Position numbers and translations under genes: made by a program. A stretch of 62,937 nt of DNA, counting the filler, from Octopus bimaculoides (taxonomy: Eukaryota): NCBI RefSeq assembly GCF_001194135.2. It is 8 parts of 8 records of this genome, joined end to end, with 100 filler letters (N's around TTAATTAATTAA, not from the genome) between each part and the next. Parts side by side here need not be neighbours in the genome. Positions count along the whole stretch, not along the records: positions 4,033 to 19,170 come from NC_068986.1; 7 more parts are not named here. One strand, written 5' to 3'. The notes beneath the pieces are model-generated. The model did not search any database. It was not told where the DNA came from and saw only the letters and a list, made by a program, of their open reading frames with translations. This document shows, piece by piece, positions 4,922-17,499 of the stretch (its first letter is position 1; each line of letters opens with the position of its first letter).

Positions 4922-5697
4922 TTATAGTGAGTTTGTGTTGTGTGGACGCCCCAGACGACCGAAATAGATGAGGAATGGCTGGTGGAAGCCATCCTGTTTA
5001 ACTATGAGAACGAGACTGAGATTATCAAGGTGGCGAATTCGGCAGAGATAAACTGGCAAGGGAAGAACTTTGACGAGCCCAGAGAGCATGGAGTGGGCTT
5101 TGCAGTAAGGAACAGCTTGCTGAATATGATAGAACCAAACAGCGGCGGCTCTGAGCGACTCCCAACACTCTGCCTTAACACAAGCGAAGGCCCCATCAAC
5201 CTCGTCAGTGTGTACGCCCCAACGTTGTCTGCCACTTAGGACACTAAGGATGAGTTCTACGAGAACCTTGCATCTACCATCAGGAATATACCAAGTACCG
5301 AACAGCTTGTTCTCCTGGGCGACTTCAACGCTAGAGTGGGTGCAGACAACGACTCGTGGCCCTCTTGCCTTGATTCGTTTGGAGTGGGAAAACTCAATGA
5401 GAATGGTCAGCGACTGCTCGAGCTTTGTGCCCTTCACAACCTGTGCATCGCCAACTCCTTCTTCAAAACGAACCCCCAACACAAGGTCTCCTGGAGGTAC
5501 CCGCGCTCAAAGCACTGGCACCAACTGGATCCGATTGTGGTCAGGCGTGCTGCCATAAAAAACGTTCTCCATACACGCTCTTACCACAGTGCGGACTGCG
5601 ACACAGACCACTCCCTGGTATGCTGTAAGATCAGGCTGCAACCAAAAAGGTTCCACAGTGCAAAGAAGCCGGGGGGCCTCGCACATTGACGTTAGCA
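4922..5697 (+). pseudogene. RTE-clade non-LTR retrotransposon fragment, apurinic endonuclease (EEP) domain, frameshifted
   Basis: GVGFAV, LVSVYAPT, LLGDFNARVG, GKLNENGQRLLELC, IANSFFK...HKVSWRYPRSKHWHQLD, DCDTDHSLV across overlapping ORFs 4940-5239, 5208-5558 and 5336-5689. Confidence 0.9.
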
Positions 5698-6488: not shown

Positions 6489-7997
6489 ATGAAAAAAGGG
6501 AAATCATGTAGTTCAGAACTCATCTGGAGAAAAAAGCAGCCAGAGTATACGAAGTATTCTAACAGAACTGATACTTATGATAAGAGCTTCAGAAAAATGA
6601 GAGACGCTTTGCAATATTATGGTCCACTTGAAATATTTGAAACAATAATCACTCCAGAAATATATGAGCACATCATAAAGGAAATGTGAGGTATTCTGCA
6701 ACCAGTAAAAATAATACTGACGCACAATCAGTAGACAAACTCAAAGCATTTATTGGCATTCTCATGTTGTCCAGTTACCACAAGTTGCCCTCCACTAGAC
6801 AATACTGGTCAAATGAAGAGGATTTGAGTGTATCTCTGATCTATAAAGCTATGACAAGGAATCGTTTTCAGAATCTGAAAAGCATAATTCATTTCTATAA
6901 TGAGAACTGGGAGGAAAATAAAACTGATAAAGGTTTCAAAGTTCGCTCTCTAATTGAAATGATCCAAAACTCTTAAAAAATACAAGATTTTTGAAAAAAC
7001 TCTTTCAGTTGATGAAATGGTAATCAAGTACTACGGACACAATTCACTGAAACAATTTGTTAAAGGTAAACCCATTAGATTTGGTTACAAGTTTTGGGCC
7101 TTGTGTGGAGTGTCTGGATATTGTTATAACTTTGAACTATTTTGCGGTAAGAATGGAAAAGAAAGTCAATATGATGATCTCACTCTGGAAGCAGAGTTGT
7201 TCTTCAAATCCTTGAAGTGGTAGAAGATCCTCTCTCACACTGTATTTTTTGACAATTTATTTACAAGTTATGATTTGCTGGTTCACCTGTTGGAGAAAGG
7301 ATTCCAAGCAACAGGCACAATGAGAGAAAATCGACTAAAGAAATGTCCATTAAAAGATTCAAAATTGATGAAAAAGGAAAAAGAGGATCTTATGATTACA
7401 GATTTAATGTGACCAATGAAATACTTATAGTCAAGTGGCTTGACAATAAATGTGTGTCAATTGGTACTAACTTTGATGCAATTGAACCAACTAGTAATGT
7501 ACTTCACTGGAAAAGGCATGAAAAAACTAGAGGTAATGTTTCTCAACCTCACATTTTGACTACATATAACTATTGCATGGGAGGTGTCAATAAACATGAC
7601 TGGCTAGTGTCAAAATACACAGTTTCCATTCAAGGTAAAAAGTGGTATTGGCCACTATTTACATGATTTCTTGACATGGTCGTCGTGAATGCATGGGCTA
7701 TTTATAGTTTAGTTCATGATGGAAAGGGTGAAATATTAACATTACTCAACTTTCAAAGATATATTTGTCTTACATATCTGAAAAGTTCAACAAAAAAAAC
7801 AAACCAAAGGCATGACATCTTCCATCTCTAAGCTAATAAACAGCATGAGATATGATAGCAAAGGACATGCAATCGCAAAGCAAGAGAAGCAAGGGCAGTG
7901 TCAACATACAGACTGCCAAAGCAAACCCCTCAATTATTGTCAAAAATGCAATGTCACCCTTTGTGTGGATTCTTTTAGTCCTTATCATTCAAAATAA
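6489..7997 (+). pseudogene. piggyBac-family transposase (PGBD2/3-like), inactivated by stops and frameshifts
   Basis: AFIGILMLSSYHKLPS, MTRNRF, SVDEMVIKYYG, KPIRFGYKFWAL, FDNLFTSY, YNYCMGGVNKHD and a C-terminal Cys-rich domain (C-H-DC...CQKCNVTLC). Confidence 0.9.
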
Positions 7998-10240: not shown

Positions 10241-10480
10241 TCCACCATATAAGGAATGCTACAGCAACTGCTGCTGCACAAGCTGCAGAGAATGAAGAAC
10301 AATGTGCAATTTGCCATACAAGGAATGTTGCAACATGAGCTGCAGAGAATGAAGAACAATGCACAATTTGCCAAACAAGGAATGCTGCTGCATGAGCTAC
10401 AAAGAATGAAGGACAACCTGCAATTCAGCAGACAAGGAATGCTGCAATTGCTGCTGCACAAGCTGCAGAAGATTGAGATA
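10241..10480 (+). repeat. 57-bp (19-codon) degenerate tandem repeat in the Helitron 5' coding region
   Basis: The aatgaagaacaat-like unit starts at 10291, 10348 and 10405. Confidence 0.8.
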
Positions 10481-11376
10481 ATCGGCTGGAGAATAATGTT
10501 CAGCAGAGTATTTCAAGATCATGCAGTTCTCTGTTATCATTAAAAGCATTCGACTATGATTCTAATGTTAATTATGTTATCCACTCTGATATTAAAATTG
10601 GCAATATGTCTACCATTTGCCAGTTTTGCAACACCAAAAAGTGGTCATGAGAAACTCCTGGAATGTGTTGCTCCAATAGGAACGTTAAACCCCATCAGCA
10701 CCCTTGAGGATCTACCACAGCCATTGAAGCTTCTACTTACAAGCACAACAACAGAGTCAAAAAATTTTCTAGATAAGATCAGAAAATATAATTGTGCCAT
10801 TCAAATAACCTCTTTTAGGGCAAATATTGTCAGGGAAGGTGGATTTATGGCCACTTTCAAAGTGCACGGATAGGTGTATCACAGGACTGGATCATTCCAG
10901 CCTCTGGCAAATGAAGAGCTTCAATTTCTTCAGCTGTACTTTGTTGGCAACTATCAAGAACAAGCAGTCAGGCAGAATTCTATTTCACCTGGTACTAACC
11001 TGGATCTCACACTAAAACTTCAAGAAATGGTACGTGTGAAAAACAGCTATGTCCAGAGCTTCAAATATGCCTTGGAAACAGCACCTACAACAAATTTTAA
11101 TGAGGTACTTAATGCTGGCCAAAGGCCATCTCGGGAACATGCAGGTCACTATAATGTATCTGCATGCAATGAAATTGCTGTAGTTCTCCATGGTGACCAG
11201 CACAAGAAAAGAGACATTGTTCTCAAGCGTTGTGACAACACCTTACAATGGATCAGTGAAACACACAGATCCTACAATGCGCTCCAATATCCAGTGCTCT
11301 TCATGAATGGTGAAGATGGATACTATTTCAGTATTCTACAGCATAATACTGATGCAACCAATGAAAAACAAATTAA

Positions 11377-12378
11377 TGTTATATCCCTATCTCCCGAGCT
11401 GGGTTTGAAACCGTATTCTGGTTGTTGAGGACAATGGTATTTCCTTTGTCCTGTCAACAACCACAGCTATTTTTAGCGTAGGTGTGATCAATGACTCTTT
11501 CCGGTCATCGAAAGTTCAGAAAAACAAGTGAGGAATTGTACTGAACTGACCCAGCTTTGGAGGGGGGAAAGTAGCACTGTAAAGCTATGGCATTTGTGAT
11601 AAATACAACGGTCGAGTTGGTATCAAGGAGTTGGCGAGAGCAGTTGGCATCAAGCGGTTGGTGGACAGCAGTTGGATGAAGAACGCGAGCCGGTGTGAAG
11701 GCTAGCAGCCAACCAAGATGAACAGAGAGTCTGTCAGGCAGAGGCTGAGAAAGTACTAGTTAACCGATAGGGACTGAAGCAATGAGAGAGAGGAACAGAG
11801 AGATGGAACTGTTGTGGCAGCCAAGAGATGGTAGTAGTCAGTTGGTCACTTCTTGGATTGTAGTAGGAGCTTCGAAGAAAAGAAAATTCGTGCGGTGAAG
11901 GTTTGCTTAAATATTCTTTAAAAGTGTACTTGTCGTTACATGTTTTGAAAAAGAAAAAGAGATTTCGTTAACTGTGATGTTGACGGGTGGAAAAGAAAAG
12001 AAATAACTTTGTGACATGTTGTTAATGGAAAAGAAAAACAACGAAGTGAAGGAACTGTTAATTCGACTTGATATATGAACTCTTGATTGTAAACTTGTGA
12101 TTATGTAATGTTCTGAAACCTTTGTTAAATGCTATTGAATTTATAGTTATGCTTTATGCTCTGTTATGTATTGTTTGATGTAAAAAGAAAAAAAGTTAGT
12201 TCCACTACCCAACACATGGTCTCCGTGTTATTTCTTCCTCCCTTTGCCTGTTGTCTTTGTTACGTGCTCCGGCCTGGGCTTGGTCGTGGCGAACATCCCG
12301 ACTCACTGAGCGTCGACGTTCACGCGCGCGCGAGTTCTCTCTTCGTTTGAGGTGCTTCGCATGCGGACTTTCGTAACA
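11377..12378 (+). mobile_element. 5' LTR (~1.0 kb) of a Gypsy/Ty3 retrotransposon
   Basis: Begins TGTTA where the Helitron frame breaks, ends TAACA (inverted termini), and is followed by a PBS. Confidence 0.85.
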
Positions 12379-12381
12379 AAC

Positions 12382-12399
12382 TGGTGTCAGAAGTGGGAT
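12382..12399 (+). promoter_or_regulatory. Primer-binding site TGGTGTCAGAAGTGGGAT (tRNA 3'-end complement, probably Leu)
   Basis: TGG-initiated 18-mer 3 nt after the LTR end; a typical Gypsy PBS sequence. Confidence 0.85.
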
Positions 12400-12424: not shown

Positions 12425-13366
12425 TTGTTTGTTATGGCTTCGGAAGGAGAGCGTACGAAGGGCCAGGCAGGGAGGGAGGAAGTATCCCTGGCCTTGATTG
12501 TGAGAATGCTGGAAGGACAGAAGGAGAGCTTCGCTGAACTCAGGAAAGAGCAACAGCAAATGACTACTGAAAAAATAAAAGAAAAATATAGAAACAGTTC
12601 ATGGAGAAAATGGCAACAGGAACTGTTAGATGAACTACAGAATGAACCAGATCAGCGTAAAATAATATGGTATTCGGATCCTATTGGGAATAGTGGAAAA
12701 ACATATTTATCGAGATACCTGCAGACTTTAGATGGTATAAGATTCGAGAATGGAAGAAGTCTGGATATAAAGTTCATGTACAATGGACAACGCATTGTTA
12801 TTTTTGACTTAACAAGAAGTCAAGAACAACATATCAACTACGAGGTTATGGAAAGCGTTAAAAATGGTCTGATATGTTCCTGTAAATACGTATCTGTCAC
12901 CAAAAGTTTTGAAATACCGCATGTAGTGGTATTTGCTAATTACGATCCAGATCAAACAAAGATGAGTGCGGATAGATGGGATATTCGTCCTCTTACACCC
13001 GCAGACAACACAATGGTATTTAAAGAAATACTACAAGAATTTCTAGAGAATGAGGTTGATATTGAAAATATGCCAGCGTTAGAAGATATAACCAACATGT
13101 ACAGTCAGGACACCGATGAATTAATTGACGAAATGAATCGTTCTGAATGTGAATACGAAATGGAAAAATATAAGAAGAGAAAGCTTAACTCCCCTACTCC
13201 TCTTATTAGACATGATGCAATAGACGGTAACATTTCATTCTTCTGCAATAACAATGTCGAGAAATGTAATTGTCAATTTGTTAGAAGAGAAAATGAAATG
13301 CTGATGGAGAAGATAAAGATGTTAAATGAAAAACTTGATAAATACGAAAGTGTAGATTCTGAATAA
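12425..13366 (+). CDS. Chimeric 313-aa ORF: Gypsy Gag N-terminus (~aa 4-46) fused in frame to a CRESS-virus Rep SF3-helicase domain (~aa 47-190) and an acidic/coiled-coil tail
   Basis: WQQELL...RKIIWYSDPIGNSGKT (Walker A), IVIFDL (Walker B), YEVMESVKNG...KY (B'), VVVFAN (motif C), SADRW (Arg finger). No HUH motifs. No stops. Likely start ATG at 12434. Confidence 0.85.
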   Translation: MFVMASEGERTKGQAGREEVSLALIVRMLEGQKESFAELRKEQQQMTTEKIKEKYRNSSWRKWQQELLDELQNEPDQRKIIWYSDPIGNSGKTYLSRYLQTLDGIRFENGRSLDIKFMYNGQRIVIFDLTRSQEQHINYEVMESVKNGLICSCKYVSVTKSFEIPHVVVFANYDPDQTKMSADRWDIRPLTPADNTMVFKEILQEFLENEVDIENMPALEDITNMYSQDTDELIDEMNRSECEYEMEKYKKRKLNSPTPLIRHDAIDGNISFFCNNNVEKCNCQFVRRENEMLMEKIKMLNEKLDKYESVDSE

Positions 13367-13770
13367 AATCTTTATTTCACGTAAATACATTGTTTGTTAT
13401 TTACGAATGTTTTTGCATCCTCTTGCACGTTATATGTATACTAATAACCCCAAAACATTCGCATCTTCGTCACGTCACGCGACGTTTACTCAATCACTCA
13501 TCCTTCTGCAGTGTGCTTTGTTGATAGTCAATCATTGTATGTAGCTCCGTTTCTGCGACCATAACAACGAATAATGACAAAATTGGTATAATCCATTACG
13601 GTATCTTTCGAAGACTGAACACACATTGCGATACCGTTAGCTGAATGTTGAGGAAATGCTTTATCGGGTACCTGGCCGAAAGGGGCCTCAGCCATATCCC
13701 ATTTCTGAACTCCACGAATATACATAGTAGGATATGGCATGCTGTCATTAGGATCGTAACTTTTGGAATC
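12563..13770. mobile_element. Endogenous CRESS-DNA-virus-like fragment (Rep 3' half, intergenic region, convergent ORF 3' end) inserted in gag
   Basis: Gag-like coiled coil stops at ~12562 and resumes at ~13771 (RQFREEFRRLSSDV). The intervening DNA is visibly more AT-rich and encodes the Rep helicase. Boundaries are uncertain by about 10 nt. Confidence 0.8.
13528..13770 (-). pseudogene. 5'-truncated convergent ORF, possibly the C-terminus of a viral capsid protein
   Basis: Frame is open from the gag junction: DSKSYDPNDSMPYPTMYIRGVQKWDMAEAPFGQ...DYTNFVIIRCYGRRNGATYND*. It is convergent with Rep. The capsid identity is inferred from position and composition only. Confidence 0.4.
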
Positions 13771-14898
13771 ACCGACAATTTAGGGAGGAGTTCCGCAGAC
13801 TGAGCAGTGATGTCGCATGGTGTAAACAGCAGGTGGAAAGGCTTAACGAGAGGATGGAGCGTGTTGAGAAATTTTGTGCTGCCGAGCCTGAGGTTGCTAA
13901 ACCTGAAGAAGTTGCTATTGCTGCGTCATCACGTGATACTCCGACGTCTGAGTGCGGATCTCCTGAAGTTCAGAGTAGCGGTGTGGTCCCAATTAGGAAG
14001 AAGTCACAGGAGTTTGATGGCAAGGTGTCGTGGGAAGCCTACCGGATCCAGTTCGAGATGCTAGCAGACCAAAACGATTGGGACGAGGGGCAAAGAGCCG
14101 TTCAGCTTGCCACTAGTCTGAAGGGTCCTGCACTGGAGGTGCTGGGCCAGCTGTCGAAAGTAGACAGGAATCAATACTCGGCGCTAGTTGAAGTTCTCAA
14201 CAGGAAATATGGCACTATGTGCCAGAGTGAAGTGTACAGGGCACGTCTCTGCACCCGTGTTAGGGTTCGAGGGGAGCCTCTACAACAGCTTGCCCAGGAT
14301 TTGGAAAGCACGGTACACAAAGCATACCCGACNNNNNNNNNNNNNNNNNNNNNNNNNNNNNNNNNNNNNNNNNNNNNNNNNNNNNNNNNNNNNNNNNNNN
14401 NNNNNNNNNNNNNNNNNNNNNNNNNNNNNNNNNNNNNNNNNNNNNNNNNNNNNNNNNNNNNNNNNNNNNNNNNNNNNNNNNNNNNNNNNNNNNNNNNNNN
14501 NNNNNNNNNNNNNNNNNNNNNNNNNNNNNNNNNNNNNNNNNNNNNNNNNNNNNNNNNNNNNNNNNNNNNNNNNNNNNNNNNNNNATGTGAAATCTAGCAC
14601 CGGAAATTTCCGGGTGAGTAACAGCTCCGGATTCATGGCTAGGAGAGTAAAAGTCCGTGAAGCTGAAGGACTTCGAAATAATCGAAAACTTTGTGAGCGG
14701 AACGAAGAGATGGCTGGTGTGTGTTGTTGGCACTGTGGGAGAAGTGGACACAGGCAGCGGGACTGCTACAGTTGGCGGCGAGAGAAGAAACAGAACGATA
14801 GAGCAGGATCTGTTTTCAAGGGCGAGTGTTGGTGTTGCAAGAAAAAGGGACACCTGAGTTATGACTGCCCAACAAGAAATAAAGAATCGGAAAACTAA
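13771..14898 (+). pseudogene. gag: Remainder of Gypsy gag (capsid-like domain plus two CCHC zinc knuckles), with an N gap at 14333-14584
   Basis: FDGKVSWEAYRIQFEMLADQNDW...LATSLKGPALEVL; CWHCGRSGHRQRDC and CWCCKKKGHLSYDC. Confidence 0.9.
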
Positions 14899-14947
14899 GA
14901 GGAGCTGGTGTTAAGGAGCCTCACACTCGAGGCGGGCATTCGTAACA
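14899..14947 (+). mobile_element. Short right end of the Gypsy element (pol absent; LTR-like 3' terminus TTCGTAACA)
   Basis: gcgggcattcgtaaca resembles the 5' LTR end gcggactttcgtaaca. The Helitron frame resumes immediately after it. Confidence 0.65.
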
Positions 14948-17499
14948 ATACCAACAAAACATTTCCTGCGTGGACTTCCATGCATTTCGCTTTATGACCC
15001 GAGTCAACTGTTTTAATCACCTCCACCATTCACAAGAACTCTATCACCAATTTACAGTTGATATGGGTGCAAAAATGGAGTCAGAAGGATTGTGGTACAT
15101 AAAATTAAATCAGAAAAAGTTGCATTCTGAGATTTACATTTATCTTCTAAATGGCACCAACAATGATGCAGCTCCTGGAAGCCTAGGACAAGTCTGTATC
15201 CTGCCATCAACTTTCACAGGAGGTTCCCACTACATGCACGAGAGAACCCAAGATGCTATAACATGCTGTATTATGGCAGGCCTGACCTATTTATAACTTT
15301 TACTTGCAATCCTAAATGGAATGAGATCAAGAATGAACTCCTCCCAGGTCAAAAGACCAAAGACAGACATGACCTCCTGGCCAGAGTCTTTCAGCTGAAA
15401 GTTAATTAAACTCCTCAACCACATCAAGAAAGTGCAGGTATTTGGATCTGTAAAATGTGACATGTACACAACTGAATGGTAAAAAAGAGGCTTTCCACAT
15501 GCGCAAATTCTGATTTGGCTGTCAACAAAAATCAGTTCCAATGACATTGACAAAATTATCTCTGTAGAGCTTCGAGATCCATCTACTGACAAGGAATTGC
15601 ATGTGATAGTGAAGACAAACATGGTGCATGGTCCATGTGGGTGTGGCTTCAACCTAATCTTACCATGTTTGAAAGACAATGTGTGCACCAAAAAGTTTTA
15701 CAGGCAGTTTTTTTCAAGAAACCCAGACTGGCGTTGACGGATATTCATCATGCAGACAAAGGAAACCAGAAGATGGAGGATTTACAGCAAAGATTGGTCA
15801 ACACGGGGTTGACGACAGATGGATAGTATTGTACTGTCTACTCCTATTAAAGGCATTCAATGCCCATATCAATGTTGAGTTCTATAACTCTGAGAAGTCC
15901 ATCAAGTACATAGATGATTATATACACAAGGGTTCAGATGCTGCCATGTTTAGCTGTCAACAAGAAAACAGCCGAGATGAGGTAACACAATACCAAGTGG
16001 GACGATACATCAGTAGCAATGAAGCTTTCTGGCGCAATTTTTTTTTTTACTTTACACTACACCAAAGGCACCCTGCCATTGAACAGCTTGCAGTGCACCT
16101 GGAAAATGGTCAAAGTGTGTACTTCACCAATGCTAATGCAGCTCAATTGACACAGGAACCAAAGGACACCACCCTCACTGCATTTTTCAAACATTGCCAA
16201 GTAGGTCCATTTGTTCAAATCTTGCTGTATCCCAAGGTACCATCCTACTACACCTGGAACAAGAAGACATGGACACAAAGACAGGCAGGTCAAGCTATAT
16301 TGATGGACAACCTGGCATAAAGTTTAACAATTGCATGTGGAGAGTTTACACAGTCATCCCAGCCAACACATGTGTTACCATTTCTGTCTGCTACTGCATG
16401 AGGTCAGAGGACCAGGTTTCCAAGACCTAAAAACTGTTGATGGACAAGTTTGTGCTACATATAGGGAAACCAGCTTTAAACATGGACTACTAGAACATGG
16501 TGCACAGTGGGATGCAATTTTGGCCACCTAGAAGTCTTGGGGCACTATTTGCAATATCATTGCTACCATGTGAACTGTATGATCCTCTTTGTGGCTCAAG
16601 TATAGAGATGACCTGCCTGAAGATCTGAAACATCAAGCACAATTGCAGTTTCCTATCATGGAAGTAGGTTTCAGTCATGAAGTCTAATTGACATAGAAGA
16701 CATGAAGCACTAATTGACATAGAAGACAAGATTGTTTTAATGAGTAGAAATGCTTTGCCCACATATGGCCTGCCCCAAACCTAGCAAACAGGGTCAACCA
16801 CCTTTCCCAAAGGTATCTTAGAAGAAACATCCTACAACATTGATGCTCTTGCCAGATATGTCATTGAAACTGAGTCAAAACTGCTTCCGGACCAGCAACG
16901 GGCTTACAACACTATTGTTGACTGTATGTGCCACTGAAAAAGAGGCATCTTTTTCTTGGAAGCATCTGGCGGAACAGGAAAAATATTTGTGACAAAACTT
17001 CTCCTCACCCAAGTTAGGCAGCACAAGAACATTGCATTAGCTGTGGCATTCTCTGGGATTGCTGCAACTTTGCTGCCTGGTGGCAGGACAGTACATTCAA
17101 CCTTTAAGCTTCCTCTGAATTTAGCAACATCAGCAAGAGCTCAGACAAGGCACAAGTGCTAAGAAGGTACCAGCTCATTGTGTGCACCGTGACACACAAA
17201 GGAGCACTTGAAGCACTTGATAAAACCTTACAAGACATCAGAGACTGTCAGGATCCAATGGGAGATGTTACTCTCCTGTGGTCTGAGGATTTCAAGCAGA
17301 CTCTTCTAGCTATTCCCAAAGGAATCAGGGCAGATGAAGTCCGAGCATGTCTTATGTCCTCTTCATTGTGGCACCAGGTCACAACATTGACTCTTAACAC
17401 CAACATGAGAGCTCCACTGTACAGCAACCAACCGTCAGCAAAATCCCTGAGGTCATGACAAAAACATTTTTAGACAGACAACAATAATGGGGATTTCTT

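What the first reader, a model, noticed from the sequence alone, without database searches (positions are those of the whole stretch)
12425..13366. Intact Gag-Rep chimeric ORF: a CRESS-virus SF3 helicase fused to a Gypsy Gag leader downstream of an LTR
Seen: 313 uninterrupted codons starting just after the LTR and PBS. The first ~45 residues are the Gag coiled-coil leader, whose continuation lies 1.2 kb downstream. Walker A (DPIGNSGKT, ~12677-12703), Walker B (IVIFD), B', motif C (VVFAN) and the SxDRW arginine finger follow. Established: this motif set and spacing match the C-terminal helicase half of nanovirus/alphasatellite-like CRESS Reps; the N-terminal HUH endonuclease half is missing. 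Inference: the junction supplies a start codon and a promoter to a truncated viral gene. Nearly every other coding relic in the window is riddled with stops, so the event is either recent or the frame is being maintained. A nickase-less Rep could be a dominant-negative antiviral element or cargo spread by a retroelement.
Basis: partly seen in the sequence, partly recalled or inferred. Interest (0 to 1): 0.9.

Follow-up and report, generated by a model that had tools for sequence, protein, structure and literature searches.

The report
Young circular-virus fragment inside octopus retrotransposon
A 1.2-kb piece of a small circular DNA virus (the helicase half of its replication gene plus the tail of its coat gene) was recently inserted in frame into the gag gene of a broken Ty3/Gypsy retrotransposon in an octopus genome; its open reading frame most likely reflects youth rather than a new host function.

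Summary
A 313-codon ORF (12425-13366) begins with 42 codons of a Ty3/Gypsy gag and continues into an intact SF3 helicase with every family-invariant residue.

The origin is also correct. Window 12551-13770 is a fragment of an ambisense CRESS-DNA virus. It holds the last 275 codons of Rep, a conserved 3' intergenic region and, on the other strand, the last 80 codons of a circovirus-like capsid gene. The closest relative is a 2.47-kb contig carrying full Rep (endonuclease, helicase and the same long tail) and Cap. Uninterrupted octopus Gag paralogues show that the leader and the downstream gag are contiguous. Both junctions show short microhomology.

The host element is a Gypsy copy with one 1-kb LTR, PBS and gag only, lying inside a Helitron.

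Three parts of the interpretation are not supported:
- **Nanovirus/alphasatellite label:** the genome architecture contradicts it.
- **Frame being maintained:** the capsid remnant and both gag pieces are equally free of stops. The purifying-selection signal (54 synonymous against 10 non-synonymous changes) is matched by the capsid remnant (9:1), so it was inherited from the virus.
- **Cargo spread by the retroelement:** no second chimeric copy was found.

This is a new member of a known kind (an endogenous viral element within a transposon) and is of moderate interest.

The parts
10556..11376 (+). Upstream part of a decayed Helitron. Its reading frame stops directly before the LTR.
   Evidence: ORFs 10556..10873 and 10874..11428. 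The frame ends at 11376. The Helitron assignment rests on continuity with the downstream Helitron_like_N and PIF1 matches. The upstream ORFs themselves have no Pfam hit.
11377..12378 (+). Single LTR of a Ty3/Gypsy element, about 1002 bp, with inverted termini TGTTA...TAACA.
   Evidence: The 5' end is defined by the onset of homology to O. vulgaris locus L010. The 3' end is defined by alignment to the LTR end of L009, which has two LTRs.
12382..12399 (+). Primer-binding site TGGTGTCAGAAGTGGGAT.
   Evidence: The identical 18-mer follows the 5' LTR of the two-LTR element in L009.
12434..12559 (+). gag start codon and N-terminal leader (42 codons). The last 9 bases (12551-12559) are shared with the viral Rep sequence and form a microhomology zone.
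   Evidence: tblastn of P0075 residue 1 maps to 12434. L005 Rep homology starts at 12551.
12425..13366 (+). The finding: a 313-codon chimeric ORF made of the gag leader and the truncated Rep.
   Evidence: Public gene models of 310 aa (P0069) and 286 aa (P0001) exist.
12551..13770 (.). Inserted fragment of an ambisense CRESS-DNA virus genome, about 1.2 kb at 35.7% G+C, against 46.7% in the retroelement flanks.
   Evidence: blastn to L005 (74.8%) and L001 (78.5%) covers 12552-13765 and nothing beyond. tblastn gives Rep 12551-13363 and Cap 13770-13531.
12560..13366 (+). Rep remnant: one 5' truncation and no internal stop or frameshift. It keeps the C-terminal 275 of at least 426 residues: part of the linker, the SF3 helicase and the tail.
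   Evidence: The alignment with L005 and L001 Rep shows only indels in multiples of three. All invariant and nearly invariant helicase columns are kept.
12677..12703 (+). Walker A (DPIGNSGKT; K92 invariant).
12794..12808 (+). Walker B (IVIFD; D128 nearly invariant, R131 invariant just after it).
12923..12940 (+). Motif C (VVVFAN; N172 invariant).
12965..12979 (+). SADRW, the arginine-finger region (D183 and R184 invariant).
12989..13363 (+). Long C-terminal tail specific to this virus lineage: an acidic stretch, KKRK (nuclear-localisation-like, inferred from sequence only), a Cys motif (FFCNNNVEKCNCQF) and a terminal helix.
   Evidence: The tail is present in L005 full Rep, L001 and P0004. It is matched in only a handful of 7073 relatives. 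AF2 predicts helix 282-312 with pLDDT about 90.
13362..13367 (+). AATAAA overlapping the Rep stop codon.
   Evidence: It is conserved in the window, L001 and L005.
13424..13499 (.). Nearly invariant non-coding block of the viral 3' intergenic region, containing a 12-nt palindrome (one mismatch in the window).
   Evidence: Three-way alignment. No excess folding stability.
13528..13770 (-). Capsid-gene remnant: one 5' truncation and no internal stop. It keeps the last 80 codons plus the stop, and is convergent with Rep.
   Evidence: It is 77.5% identical to residues 178-257 of the 262-aa Cap of L005. L005 Cap matches PF02443 Circo_capsid at E = 2.7e-5, below Pfam's cut-off.
13767..14898 (+). Continuation of gag: capsid-like part and two CCHC zinc knuckles. 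It is interrupted by an assembly gap (N run 14333-14584) and has no stop on either side of the gap.
14899..14956 (+). Last retroelement bases. Homology to L009 and L010 ends here. No pol and no 3' LTR follow.
   Evidence: No long direct repeat was found in the piece.
14958..17458 (+). Downstream part of the same Helitron (Helitron_like_N, PIF1-like helicase).
   Evidence: PF14214 at 5.7e-14 for the ORF at 14970 and PF05970 at 3.8e-16 for the ORF at 17156. The frame resumes near 14958.

Best explanation
The locus is a young, probably neutral endogenous viral element.

**What it is.** A linear fragment of the double-stranded form of a circular ssDNA (CRESS) virus that infects octopuses, or something living inside them, was joined by end-joining with short microhomology into the gag gene of a Ty3/Gypsy copy. 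The fragment is the part of the circle that holds the convergent 3' ends of rep and cap.

**How the fusion arose.** The insertion landed in the sense orientation and in frame, a 1-in-6 outcome. As a result, the gag ATG and the upstream LTR now precede 42 gag codons followed by a Rep that lacks its HUH endonuclease. The ORF ends at the viral stop codon and poly(A) signal.

**Why the frame is open.** The insertion is recent, not because the host keeps it. The fragment has no endonuclease and no recognisable origin. The carrier retroelement has no pol and no 3' LTR. So the block is neither a virus nor a mobile element.

**Shown and inferred.** Shown: the anatomy, the homology, the junctions and the substitution pattern. 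Inferred: the joining mechanism, the recency and the lack of function.
For: **Viral origin**
- relatives are CRESS Reps with PF02407 upstream of the matched region.
- contig L005 carries a full Rep (PF02407 at 66.6 bits, the helicase and the same tail) and a 262-aa Cap with an Arg-rich N-terminus.
- the window matches L005 over 12551-13770 on both genes.

**Insertion into gag**
- the leader and the continuation are contiguous in P0075 and P0076.
- Microhomology covers 12551-12559 and 13767-13770.

**DNA-level origin rather than mRNA**
- The fragment runs about 400 nt past the conserved Rep AATAAA into antisense cap.

**Youth**
- Synonymous sites are saturated between the window, L001 and L005, while dN is 0.06-0.14.
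- The window-specific branch has 54 synonymous and 10 non-synonymous changes in Rep.
- The 80-codon cap remnant, which cannot be functional, shows the same pattern (9:1) and has no stop.
- The gag pieces of 189 and 103 codons are also stop-free.
- At most about 1.6% neutral divergence can have accumulated since integration.

**Real insertion, not a mis-join**
- Both junctions lie in gap-free sequence and are flanked by the two matching halves of one gag.

**Not mobile**
- No pol, no 3' LTR and no second LTR copy.

**Independent integrations of the same lineage**
- L001 and L002 in O. vulgaris have different flanks.
Against: - Recency is an upper-bound argument, not a date. There is no 3' LTR to date the element, and no orthologous locus could be examined.
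- Every helicase residue that is invariant across the family is intact, a decent start context exists at the gag ATG, and a poly(A) signal follows the stop. Expression and activity are therefore possible.
- Two public annotations call a gene here (P0001, P0069).
- A short period of host-level selection cannot be told apart from no selection with these data.
- The mechanism of joining (end-joining of DNA versus template switching during reverse transcription) is inferred from the content of the fragment only.
Confidence: 0.68

Rival explanations
1. Exapted antiviral gene. The LTR-driven Gag-leader/helicase fusion is expressed, enters mixed hexamers with the Rep of the infecting virus through its linker and helicase surfaces, and blocks replication (dominant-negative, EVE-derived immunity).
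For: - All invariant helicase residues are intact.
- The predicted SF3 core has pLDDT above 90, and one continuous helix (residues 36-56) runs across the junction.
- The gag ATG, the LTR and a conserved AATAAA frame the ORF.
- Gene models exist.
- An independent copy in O. vulgaris (L001) also keeps only the helicase half in an open frame.
Against: - There is no evidence of expression.
- The selection signal is shared by the useless cap remnant and so is inherited from the virus.
- Neighbouring gag pieces that lie downstream of the stop are just as open.
- The locus sits in transposon debris.
- The similar truncation in L001 is equally explained if both fragments derive from circles opened on the opposite side.
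Confidence: 0.08
2. Small-RNA template. The fragment matters, if at all, as part of a transposon-rich piRNA-producing region whose transcripts yield virus-matching piRNAs. The protein-coding frame is irrelevant.
For: - The fragment lies inside nested Gypsy, Helitron, piggyBac and LINE remains. In arthropods, EVEs that produce piRNAs tend to lie in this kind of context (general knowledge, not tested here).
- Both strands of the virus are represented.
Against: No small-RNA data were available. Nothing in the sequence itself shows a piRNA cluster. The evidence is context only.
Confidence: 0.12
3. Retroelement cargo. The viral piece was picked up by template switching during Gypsy reverse transcription and is copied around the genome with the element.
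For: - The viral fragment sits inside gag, with microhomology at both junctions. Copy-choice could also produce this.
- EVEs flanked by LTR elements are common in other invertebrates (general knowledge).
Against: - The fragment extends about 400 nt beyond the conserved Rep poly(A) signal into antisense cap, which a processed Rep mRNA would not contain.
- The carrier has no pol and no 3' LTR.
- No other retrieved protein or locus has the junction. All other Rep copies have other flanks.
Confidence: 0.06
4. Artefact. Viral contamination was mis-assembled into an octopus scaffold.
For: The scaffold has a 252-N gap 560 bp downstream. A close viral relative turned up as a contaminant contig in an unrelated bacterial assembly.
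Against: - Both junctions are in continuous sequence.
- The two flanks are the exact complementary halves of one gag with only 3-5 codons lost. A mis-join would not produce this.
- Independent integrated copies exist in a chromosome-level O. vulgaris assembly.
Confidence: 0.03

Closest known systems
Endogenous CRESS-DNA/circovirus-like elements of invertebrate genomes (listed, for example, for bivalves, gastropods, mites and spiders in PMC6069186)
   Same: It is a Rep-derived sequence integrated in an animal genome, fragmentary, and found next to or within repeats. Molluscan hosts are already on record.
   Different: The host is a cephalopod, and no paper in the searched library reports that. 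The fragment also retains a cap remnant and the 3' intergenic region. It is fused in frame to a retrotransposon gag.
The CRESS virus-like contig L005 (2467 bp, deposited within an Erwinia amylovora assembly, GCA_044652805.1) and the O. vulgaris loci L001 and L002
   Same: They belong to the same Rep lineage with the same unusual C-terminal tail and the same conserved intergenic block. Rep is 82% (L005) and 89% (L001) identical to the window, and the convergent Cap is the same.
   Different: L005 has the endonuclease half and a full Cap and is not visibly flanked by host DNA. L001 lies between GPCR genes. L002 is a much more divergent copy (about 50% Rep identity) and more complete. None is joined to gag.
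Helicase-only Rep proteins of parvoviruses (the AAV Rep52/Rep40 type; AAV2 Rep40 structures 1s9h and 9s0n came back in the fold search)
   Same: An SF3 helicase without the HUH nuclease domain. There is a structural match.
   Different: Those are regular products of an internal promoter in a different virus phylum. Here the nuclease is lost by truncation. Sequence similarity is not detectable.
Non-retroviral EVEs embedded in LTR retrotransposons in arthropod genomes (mosquito-type EVEs next to Ty3/Gypsy and BEL/Pao elements; general knowledge)
   Same: Viral sequence nested in an LTR element within a transposon-rich region.
   Different: Those mostly derive from RNA viruses through reverse transcription. 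Here the donor is a DNA virus, and the content of the fragment points to DNA end-joining.

Membership tests
CRESS-DNA virus Rep (Cressdnaviricota) | SF3 helicase domain with Walker A, Walker B, motif C and an arginine finger | tested here: met
   The window keeps all 13 invariant columns and all 11 nearly invariant helicase-region columns of a 47-sequence family alignment, including K92, D128, N172 and R184. The AF2 core has pLDDT above 90, and the best PDB fold matches are SF3 helicases, including a CRESS Rep, 9pqj.
CRESS-DNA virus Rep (Cressdnaviricota) | N-terminal HUH rolling-circle endonuclease domain (PF02407) | tested here: not met
   It is absent from the ORF and from the whole piece. 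It is present in 42 of 68 relatives and in L005 at 66.6 bits. The window sequence is therefore a truncated derivative, not a complete Rep.
CRESS-DNA virus Rep (Cressdnaviricota) | Closest sequence relatives are CRESS Reps rather than other SF3 helicases | tested here: met
   The only named viral hit is Cyanoramphus nest associated circular X DNA virus Rep (P0030). Pfam PF00910 alone is borderline, at 20.8 bits against a cut-off of 21.5.
CRESS-DNA virus genome fragment | A capsid gene adjacent to rep, and an origin with a nonanucleotide stem-loop | tested here: inconclusive
   A convergent Cap remnant is present. No origin-like nonanucleotide was found in 12551-13771. However, the pattern used was a degenerate 9-mer taken from general knowledge, and the origin would be expected in the missing part of the circle.
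   The window fragment and L001 carry a convergent cap remnant directly after rep. L005 is at least 2.47 kb and holds both genes.
   The protein libraries carry almost no names. One annelid genome protein is auto-named 'Para-Rep C1' (P0005). No reference set was available for a tree.
Ty3/Gypsy LTR retrotransposon (carrier) | LTR with TG...CA termini, a PBS, and a gag with CCHC knuckles | tested here: met
   LTR at 11377-12378, PBS at 12382-12399, and two CCHC knuckles in 14587-14895.
Ty3/Gypsy LTR retrotransposon (carrier) | pol with the order protease, RT, RNase H, integrase | tested here: not met
   The window has no pol. The order is met in the related two-LTR element of L009, with Asp_protease_2, RVT_1, RT_RNaseH, Integrase_H2C2 and rve, although that pol is split over seven ORFs. 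The family assignment therefore rests on gag, PBS and LTR homology.
Ty3/Gypsy LTR retrotransposon (carrier) | A second LTR and a target-site duplication | tested here: not met
   There is no long direct repeat in the piece, and no matching 4-6-nt duplication at 11372-11376 against 14948 onward.
Domesticated (exapted) EVE | Purifying selection after integration, conserved orthologues, and expression | tested here: inconclusive
   Low dN/dS is seen, but it is shared by the cap remnant, so it is attributable to the viral phase. Orthologues and expression are not testable with these tools.

The most novel reading that the evidence does not exclude
The Gag-leader/helicase fusion is transcribed from the LTR and translated. 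It acts as a nuclease-less Rep that interferes with replication of the still-circulating octopus CRESS virus. This would be a very young case of EVE-derived immunity, created by an in-frame landing inside a retrotransposon gene, and mirrored by the independently truncated helicase-only copy in O. vulgaris.
Probability: 0.07. Interest if true: 0.8.

Novelty: new member of a known kind. Interest (0 to 1): 0.38.

Why it matters
Most CRESS-DNA viruses are known only from metagenomes and have no assigned host. This work found several independent integrations of one Rep lineage in at least two Octopus genomes. They are little decayed and strongly divergent at synonymous sites. A near-complete free-standing relative was also found. 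Together these tie the lineage, marked by an unusual long C-terminal Rep tail and a conserved 3' intergenic element, to octopuses or to organisms living inside them. They also suggest that the lineage was circulating recently.

The locus is a clean example of how a DNA-virus fragment becomes a ready-made chimeric gene, with promoter, start codon and poly(A) signal, by landing in a retrotransposon. It also shows that an open frame in a young EVE is not in itself evidence of domestication.

Tried and rejected
1. **1-LTR circle or tandem element.** I first read a purine-rich run before 12010 as a polypurine tract, and I aligned the 338-bp LTR of L009 to 12010-12378. The alignment of 11400-12011 to the 3' internal region of L009 scored no better than shuffles, at 151 against a maximum of 147.5. 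L010 then showed that the LTR begins at 11377. The idea was dropped.
2. **Target-site duplication, or a microhomology deletion explaining the missing pol and 3' LTR.** The 9-mer TTCGTAACA occurs both at the LTR end and at 14939-14947. No duplication of the flank was found, so this remains an unproven hint.
3. **Single-sequence search of solved structures.** It gave only noise (Pumilio, E about 0.1). The family profile reached PCV2 and nanovirus Rep structures only through the endonuclease half, which the window lacks.
4. **PHROGs scan.** Nothing meaningful.
5. **IMG/VR scans.** No close relative was found with the single protein. The family alignment was too diverse for the tool.
6. **Literature.** No paper on CRESS elements in cephalopods was found. 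The octopus HGT data paper covers bacterial genes only. The run accessions of the Logan contigs are not cited anywhere in the library.
7. **Hairpin in the conserved intergenic block.** It folds no more stably than shuffled sequence.
8. **Look-ups by exact sequence.** The window's own protein and P0075 have no contig on record.
Full report
**1. Observation**

The ORF 12425..13366 (+) is real: 313 codons with no stop. Its first ATG is at 12434 and a second in-frame ATG is at 12560.
- Walker A, DPIGNSGKT, at 12677-12703
- Walker B, IVIFD, at 12794-12808
- Motif C, VVVFAN, at 12923-12940
- SADRW at 12965-12979

The viral part is A+T-rich (34% G+C), so a stop is expected every 12 codons. P(268 codons open) is 6.5e-11, and 0 of 20000 shuffles stayed open. 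The other five frames carry 7-33 stops. It is also the longest ORF in the piece that does not run through the N gap.

**2. What the helicase is**

Pfam alone is borderline: PF00910 scores 20.8 bits against a cut-off of 21.5. The large searches are unambiguous.

A search of 5.8 billion proteins gave 68 hits. Of these, 42 carry the CRESS endonuclease domain PF02407 upstream of the matched region and sit on contigs of about 2 kb. The only hit named for a virus is the Rep of Cyanoramphus nest associated circular X DNA virus.

The exhaustive search gave 7073 representative relatives, 4377 of them at E ≤ 1e-10. Nearly all match query residues about 4-150, and the match lies in the C-terminal half of proteins 300-450 aa long.

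In a 47-sequence alignment, the window ORF keeps all 13 invariant and all 11 nearly invariant helicase-region columns. These include K92, D128, N172 and R184.

An AlphaFold2 model has mean pLDDT 82.9, with the core above 90. Its best matches among solved structures are SF3 helicases: papillomavirus E1, poxvirus D5/E5, AAV Rep40 and a vientovirus Rep hexamer.

**3. The fragment is more than a gene piece**

G+C drops from 46.7% in the flanks to 35.7% between about 12551 and 13770. The O. vulgaris locus L001, which encodes P0002 (89% identical), matches the window only over 12602-13765 and has different flanks, namely GPCR genes. L001 also has a convergent 163-codon ORF directly after rep.

Searching with that ORF led to P0072 and its 2467-bp contig L005. 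L005 encodes two proteins:
- A 262-aa protein with an arginine-rich N-terminus and a weak Circo_capsid match (E = 2.7e-5, below the cut-off).
- Convergent to it, a Rep of at least 426 residues. This Rep has PF02407 at 66.6 bits, the helicase, and the same 125-residue C-terminal tail as the window ORF.

The window aligns to L005 over 12552-13764. Rep residues 152-426 map to 12551-13363, and Cap residues 178-257 map to 13770-13531 on the minus strand.

So the insert is a contiguous piece of an ambisense CRESS genome. It holds the last 275 codons of rep, the 3' intergenic region and the last 80 codons of cap. Each gene has exactly one break, a 5' truncation, and no internal stop or frameshift. 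The endonuclease half is nowhere in the piece.

This architecture contradicts the nanovirus/alphasatellite label. The tail is a trait of this virus lineage and not a host addition. It is present in L005, L001 and the divergent O. vulgaris protein P0004, but in only a handful of the 7073 relatives.

**4. The carrier and the junctions**

A search with the downstream gag piece alone returned octopus Gag proteins. P0075 and P0076 (O. bimaculoides) carry the window's leader and its continuation as one uninterrupted sequence. About 3-5 residues between them are missing in the window.

On the 5' side, gag homology runs to 12556-12559 and viral homology starts at 12551. On the 3' side, cap homology runs to 13770 and gag homology starts at 13767. 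Both junctions therefore show short overlaps of about 6-9 nt and about 4 nt.

Related elements define the other features:
- **PBS:** TGGTGTCAGAAGTGGGAT at 12382-12399. It is identical in L009, an O. sinensis element with two 338-bp LTRs.
- **Family:** L009 has the order protease, RT, RNase H, integrase, although its pol is split over seven ORFs. This makes the family Ty3/Gypsy.
- **LTR:** 11377-12378, about 1 kb, with termini TGTTA...TAACA, set by L010 from O. vulgaris.

Homology to both relatives ends at about 14947-14956, just after the gag stop at 14896-14898. There is no pol, no 3' LTR and no target-site duplication.

The whole 3.6-kb block interrupts a Helitron. The Helitron's frame stops at 11376 and resumes near 14958, followed by Helitron_like_N and PIF1 matches.

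The window is most likely from Octopus bimaculoides. The exact ORF product is in UniRef and EukProt (P0001, P0069), and the nearest Gag paralogues are from that species.

**5. Recent or maintained?**

Codon-level comparison of the window (W), L001 (V) and L005 (X) shows saturated synonymous sites in every pair, with pS above or near 0.75. dN is only 0.06-0.14, so ω is at most about 0.08. These copies diverged as replicating viruses and entered the genomes independently.

On the W-specific branch there are 54 synonymous and 10 non-synonymous changes in rep. The neutral expectation is about 1 to 4.5. The 80-codon cap remnant is an antisense C-terminal stub that cannot make a capsid. It shows the same pattern (9:1) and is also stop-free.

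The two gag pieces, which lie downstream of the fusion ORF's stop codon, have 0 stops in 189 and 103 codons. Everything in the retroelement-plus-virus block is open. Only the older Helitron, piggyBac and LINE remains are decayed.

The open frame is therefore explained by youth. At most about 1.6% neutral divergence fits the 10 non-synonymous changes. The data provide no evidence for host-level selection, and they cannot exclude it either.

**6. Mechanism**

AATAAA overlaps the rep stop in all three copies. The complementary signal for the cap strand follows 7 nt later. A processed rep mRNA would therefore end near 13390, yet the fragment continues 400 nt into antisense cap. That favours capture of viral DNA, probably the double-stranded replicative form, by end-joining with microhomology. 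Template switching on mRNA is less likely.

Both the window and L001 retain the segment with the convergent 3' ends and lack the 5' ends of both genes. This would fit circles opened on the opposite side and trimmed from both ends before joining. That is an inference.

It is unknown whether the viral piece entered an already truncated genomic Gypsy copy or an extrachromosomal Gypsy DNA that was then patched into the Helitron.

Landing in sense and in frame is a 1-in-6 outcome. The result is a transcription unit assembled from retroelement and viral parts: LTR, gag ATG, 42 gag codons, truncated Rep, and the viral poly(A) signal. The AF2 model draws one helix (residues 36-56) across the junction.

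**7. Function**

My reading is that the locus is a neutral, very young EVE (confidence about 0.68). The rivals are a dominant-negative antiviral protein (0.08), a piRNA template (0.12), retroelement-spread cargo (0.06) and an assembly artefact (0.03).
- **Cargo.** The missing pol and 3' LTR weaken this reading. No other retrieved protein or locus carries the junction.
- **Artefact.** The two complementary gag halves flank the insert in gap-free sequence, which weakens this reading.

**8. Comparison with what is known, and novelty**

CRESS-derived EVEs are known in many invertebrates, including bivalves and gastropods (PMC6069186). I found no report for cephalopods in the searched library. EVEs nested in LTR elements are a familiar pattern.

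The finding is therefore a new member of a known kind. Its value lies in three points:
- It links a CRESS lineage to a host.
- It documents several independent integrations, at least some of them recent (the window, L001 and L002, plus short contigs L004 and L006-L008 of unknown source, one of which has one frameshift in cap).
- It shows a ready-made chimeric gene at birth.

**9. Limits**

- No eukaryotic genome could be searched at the DNA level, so copy number, orthology and polymorphism are untested.
- No expression or small-RNA data were available.
- The origin-motif scan used a degenerate 9-mer recalled from general knowledge and is a weak test.
- No repaired, joined or consensus sequence was built. 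The gag pieces were compared separately.

Noticed in passing
window 13424-13499 (and L001 10846-10921, L005 994-1065): This non-coding block of the viral 3' intergenic region is almost invariant among three copies whose synonymous sites are saturated. It contains a 12-nt palindrome, CGTCGCGCGACG, with one mismatch in the window. It is not more stably folded than shuffles. It is probably a viral cis element of unknown role.
   Followed up: partly
L005 (GCA_044652805.1, JBFBPM010000001.1), whole 2467 bp: This is a near-complete CRESS virus-like contig with a full Cap and a Rep with endonuclease, helicase and tail. It is deposited as part of an Erwinia amylovora assembly and ends in a homopolymer run. 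It is almost certainly a contaminant. It is the closest free-standing relative of the octopus elements.
   Followed up: partly
L002 about 29360-31270 (O. vulgaris OX597828.1): A much more divergent copy of the same lineage (Rep about 50% identical, Cap about 32%), and more complete, with nearly full-length Cap convergent to Rep. Part of the endonuclease region is missing (one deletion). The annotation models it as the last part of a 20-kb multi-exon gene, named 'Replication associated protein' by UniRef.
   Followed up: partly
L001 9911-11440 (O. vulgaris OX597824.1): An independent integration that keeps almost the same part of the viral circle (the rep helicase half and the 3' 60% of cap, both open). 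It abuts the start of a 7tm_1 GPCR gene and is annotated as a hypothetical protein (P0002).
   Followed up: partly
window 12370-12378 and 14939-14947: The 9-mer TTCGTAACA that ends the LTR recurs where retroelement homology stops after gag. It may mark a microhomology-mediated loss of pol and the 3' LTR, but no target-site duplication supports this.
   Followed up: partly
window 13172-13183 and 13241-13282: The Rep tail has KKRK (nuclear-localisation-like) and a Cys-containing motif, FFCNNNVEKCNCQF, followed by a confidently predicted long helix (residues 282-312). These features are conserved in L005 and L001 and rare elsewhere in the family.
   Followed up: partly
window 4940-5689, 6686-7666, 10260-10496: Other debris in the piece: LINE-like ORFs (no Pfam hit for the one ORF tested), two fragments of a piggyBac-type transposase (PF13843), and four 57-nt tandem repeats lying within ORF 10256..10543, just upstream of the first Helitron-attributed ORF.
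   Followed up: partly
L010 (O. vulgaris OX597821.1), gene model P0079: A gene model named 'arsenite methyltransferase-like' joins a 7tm_2 receptor fragment to Gypsy gag with a CCHC knuckle. It looks like an annotation chimera across a retroelement. Homology of this copy to the window also ends just after gag; what follows in L010 was not examined.
   Followed up: no
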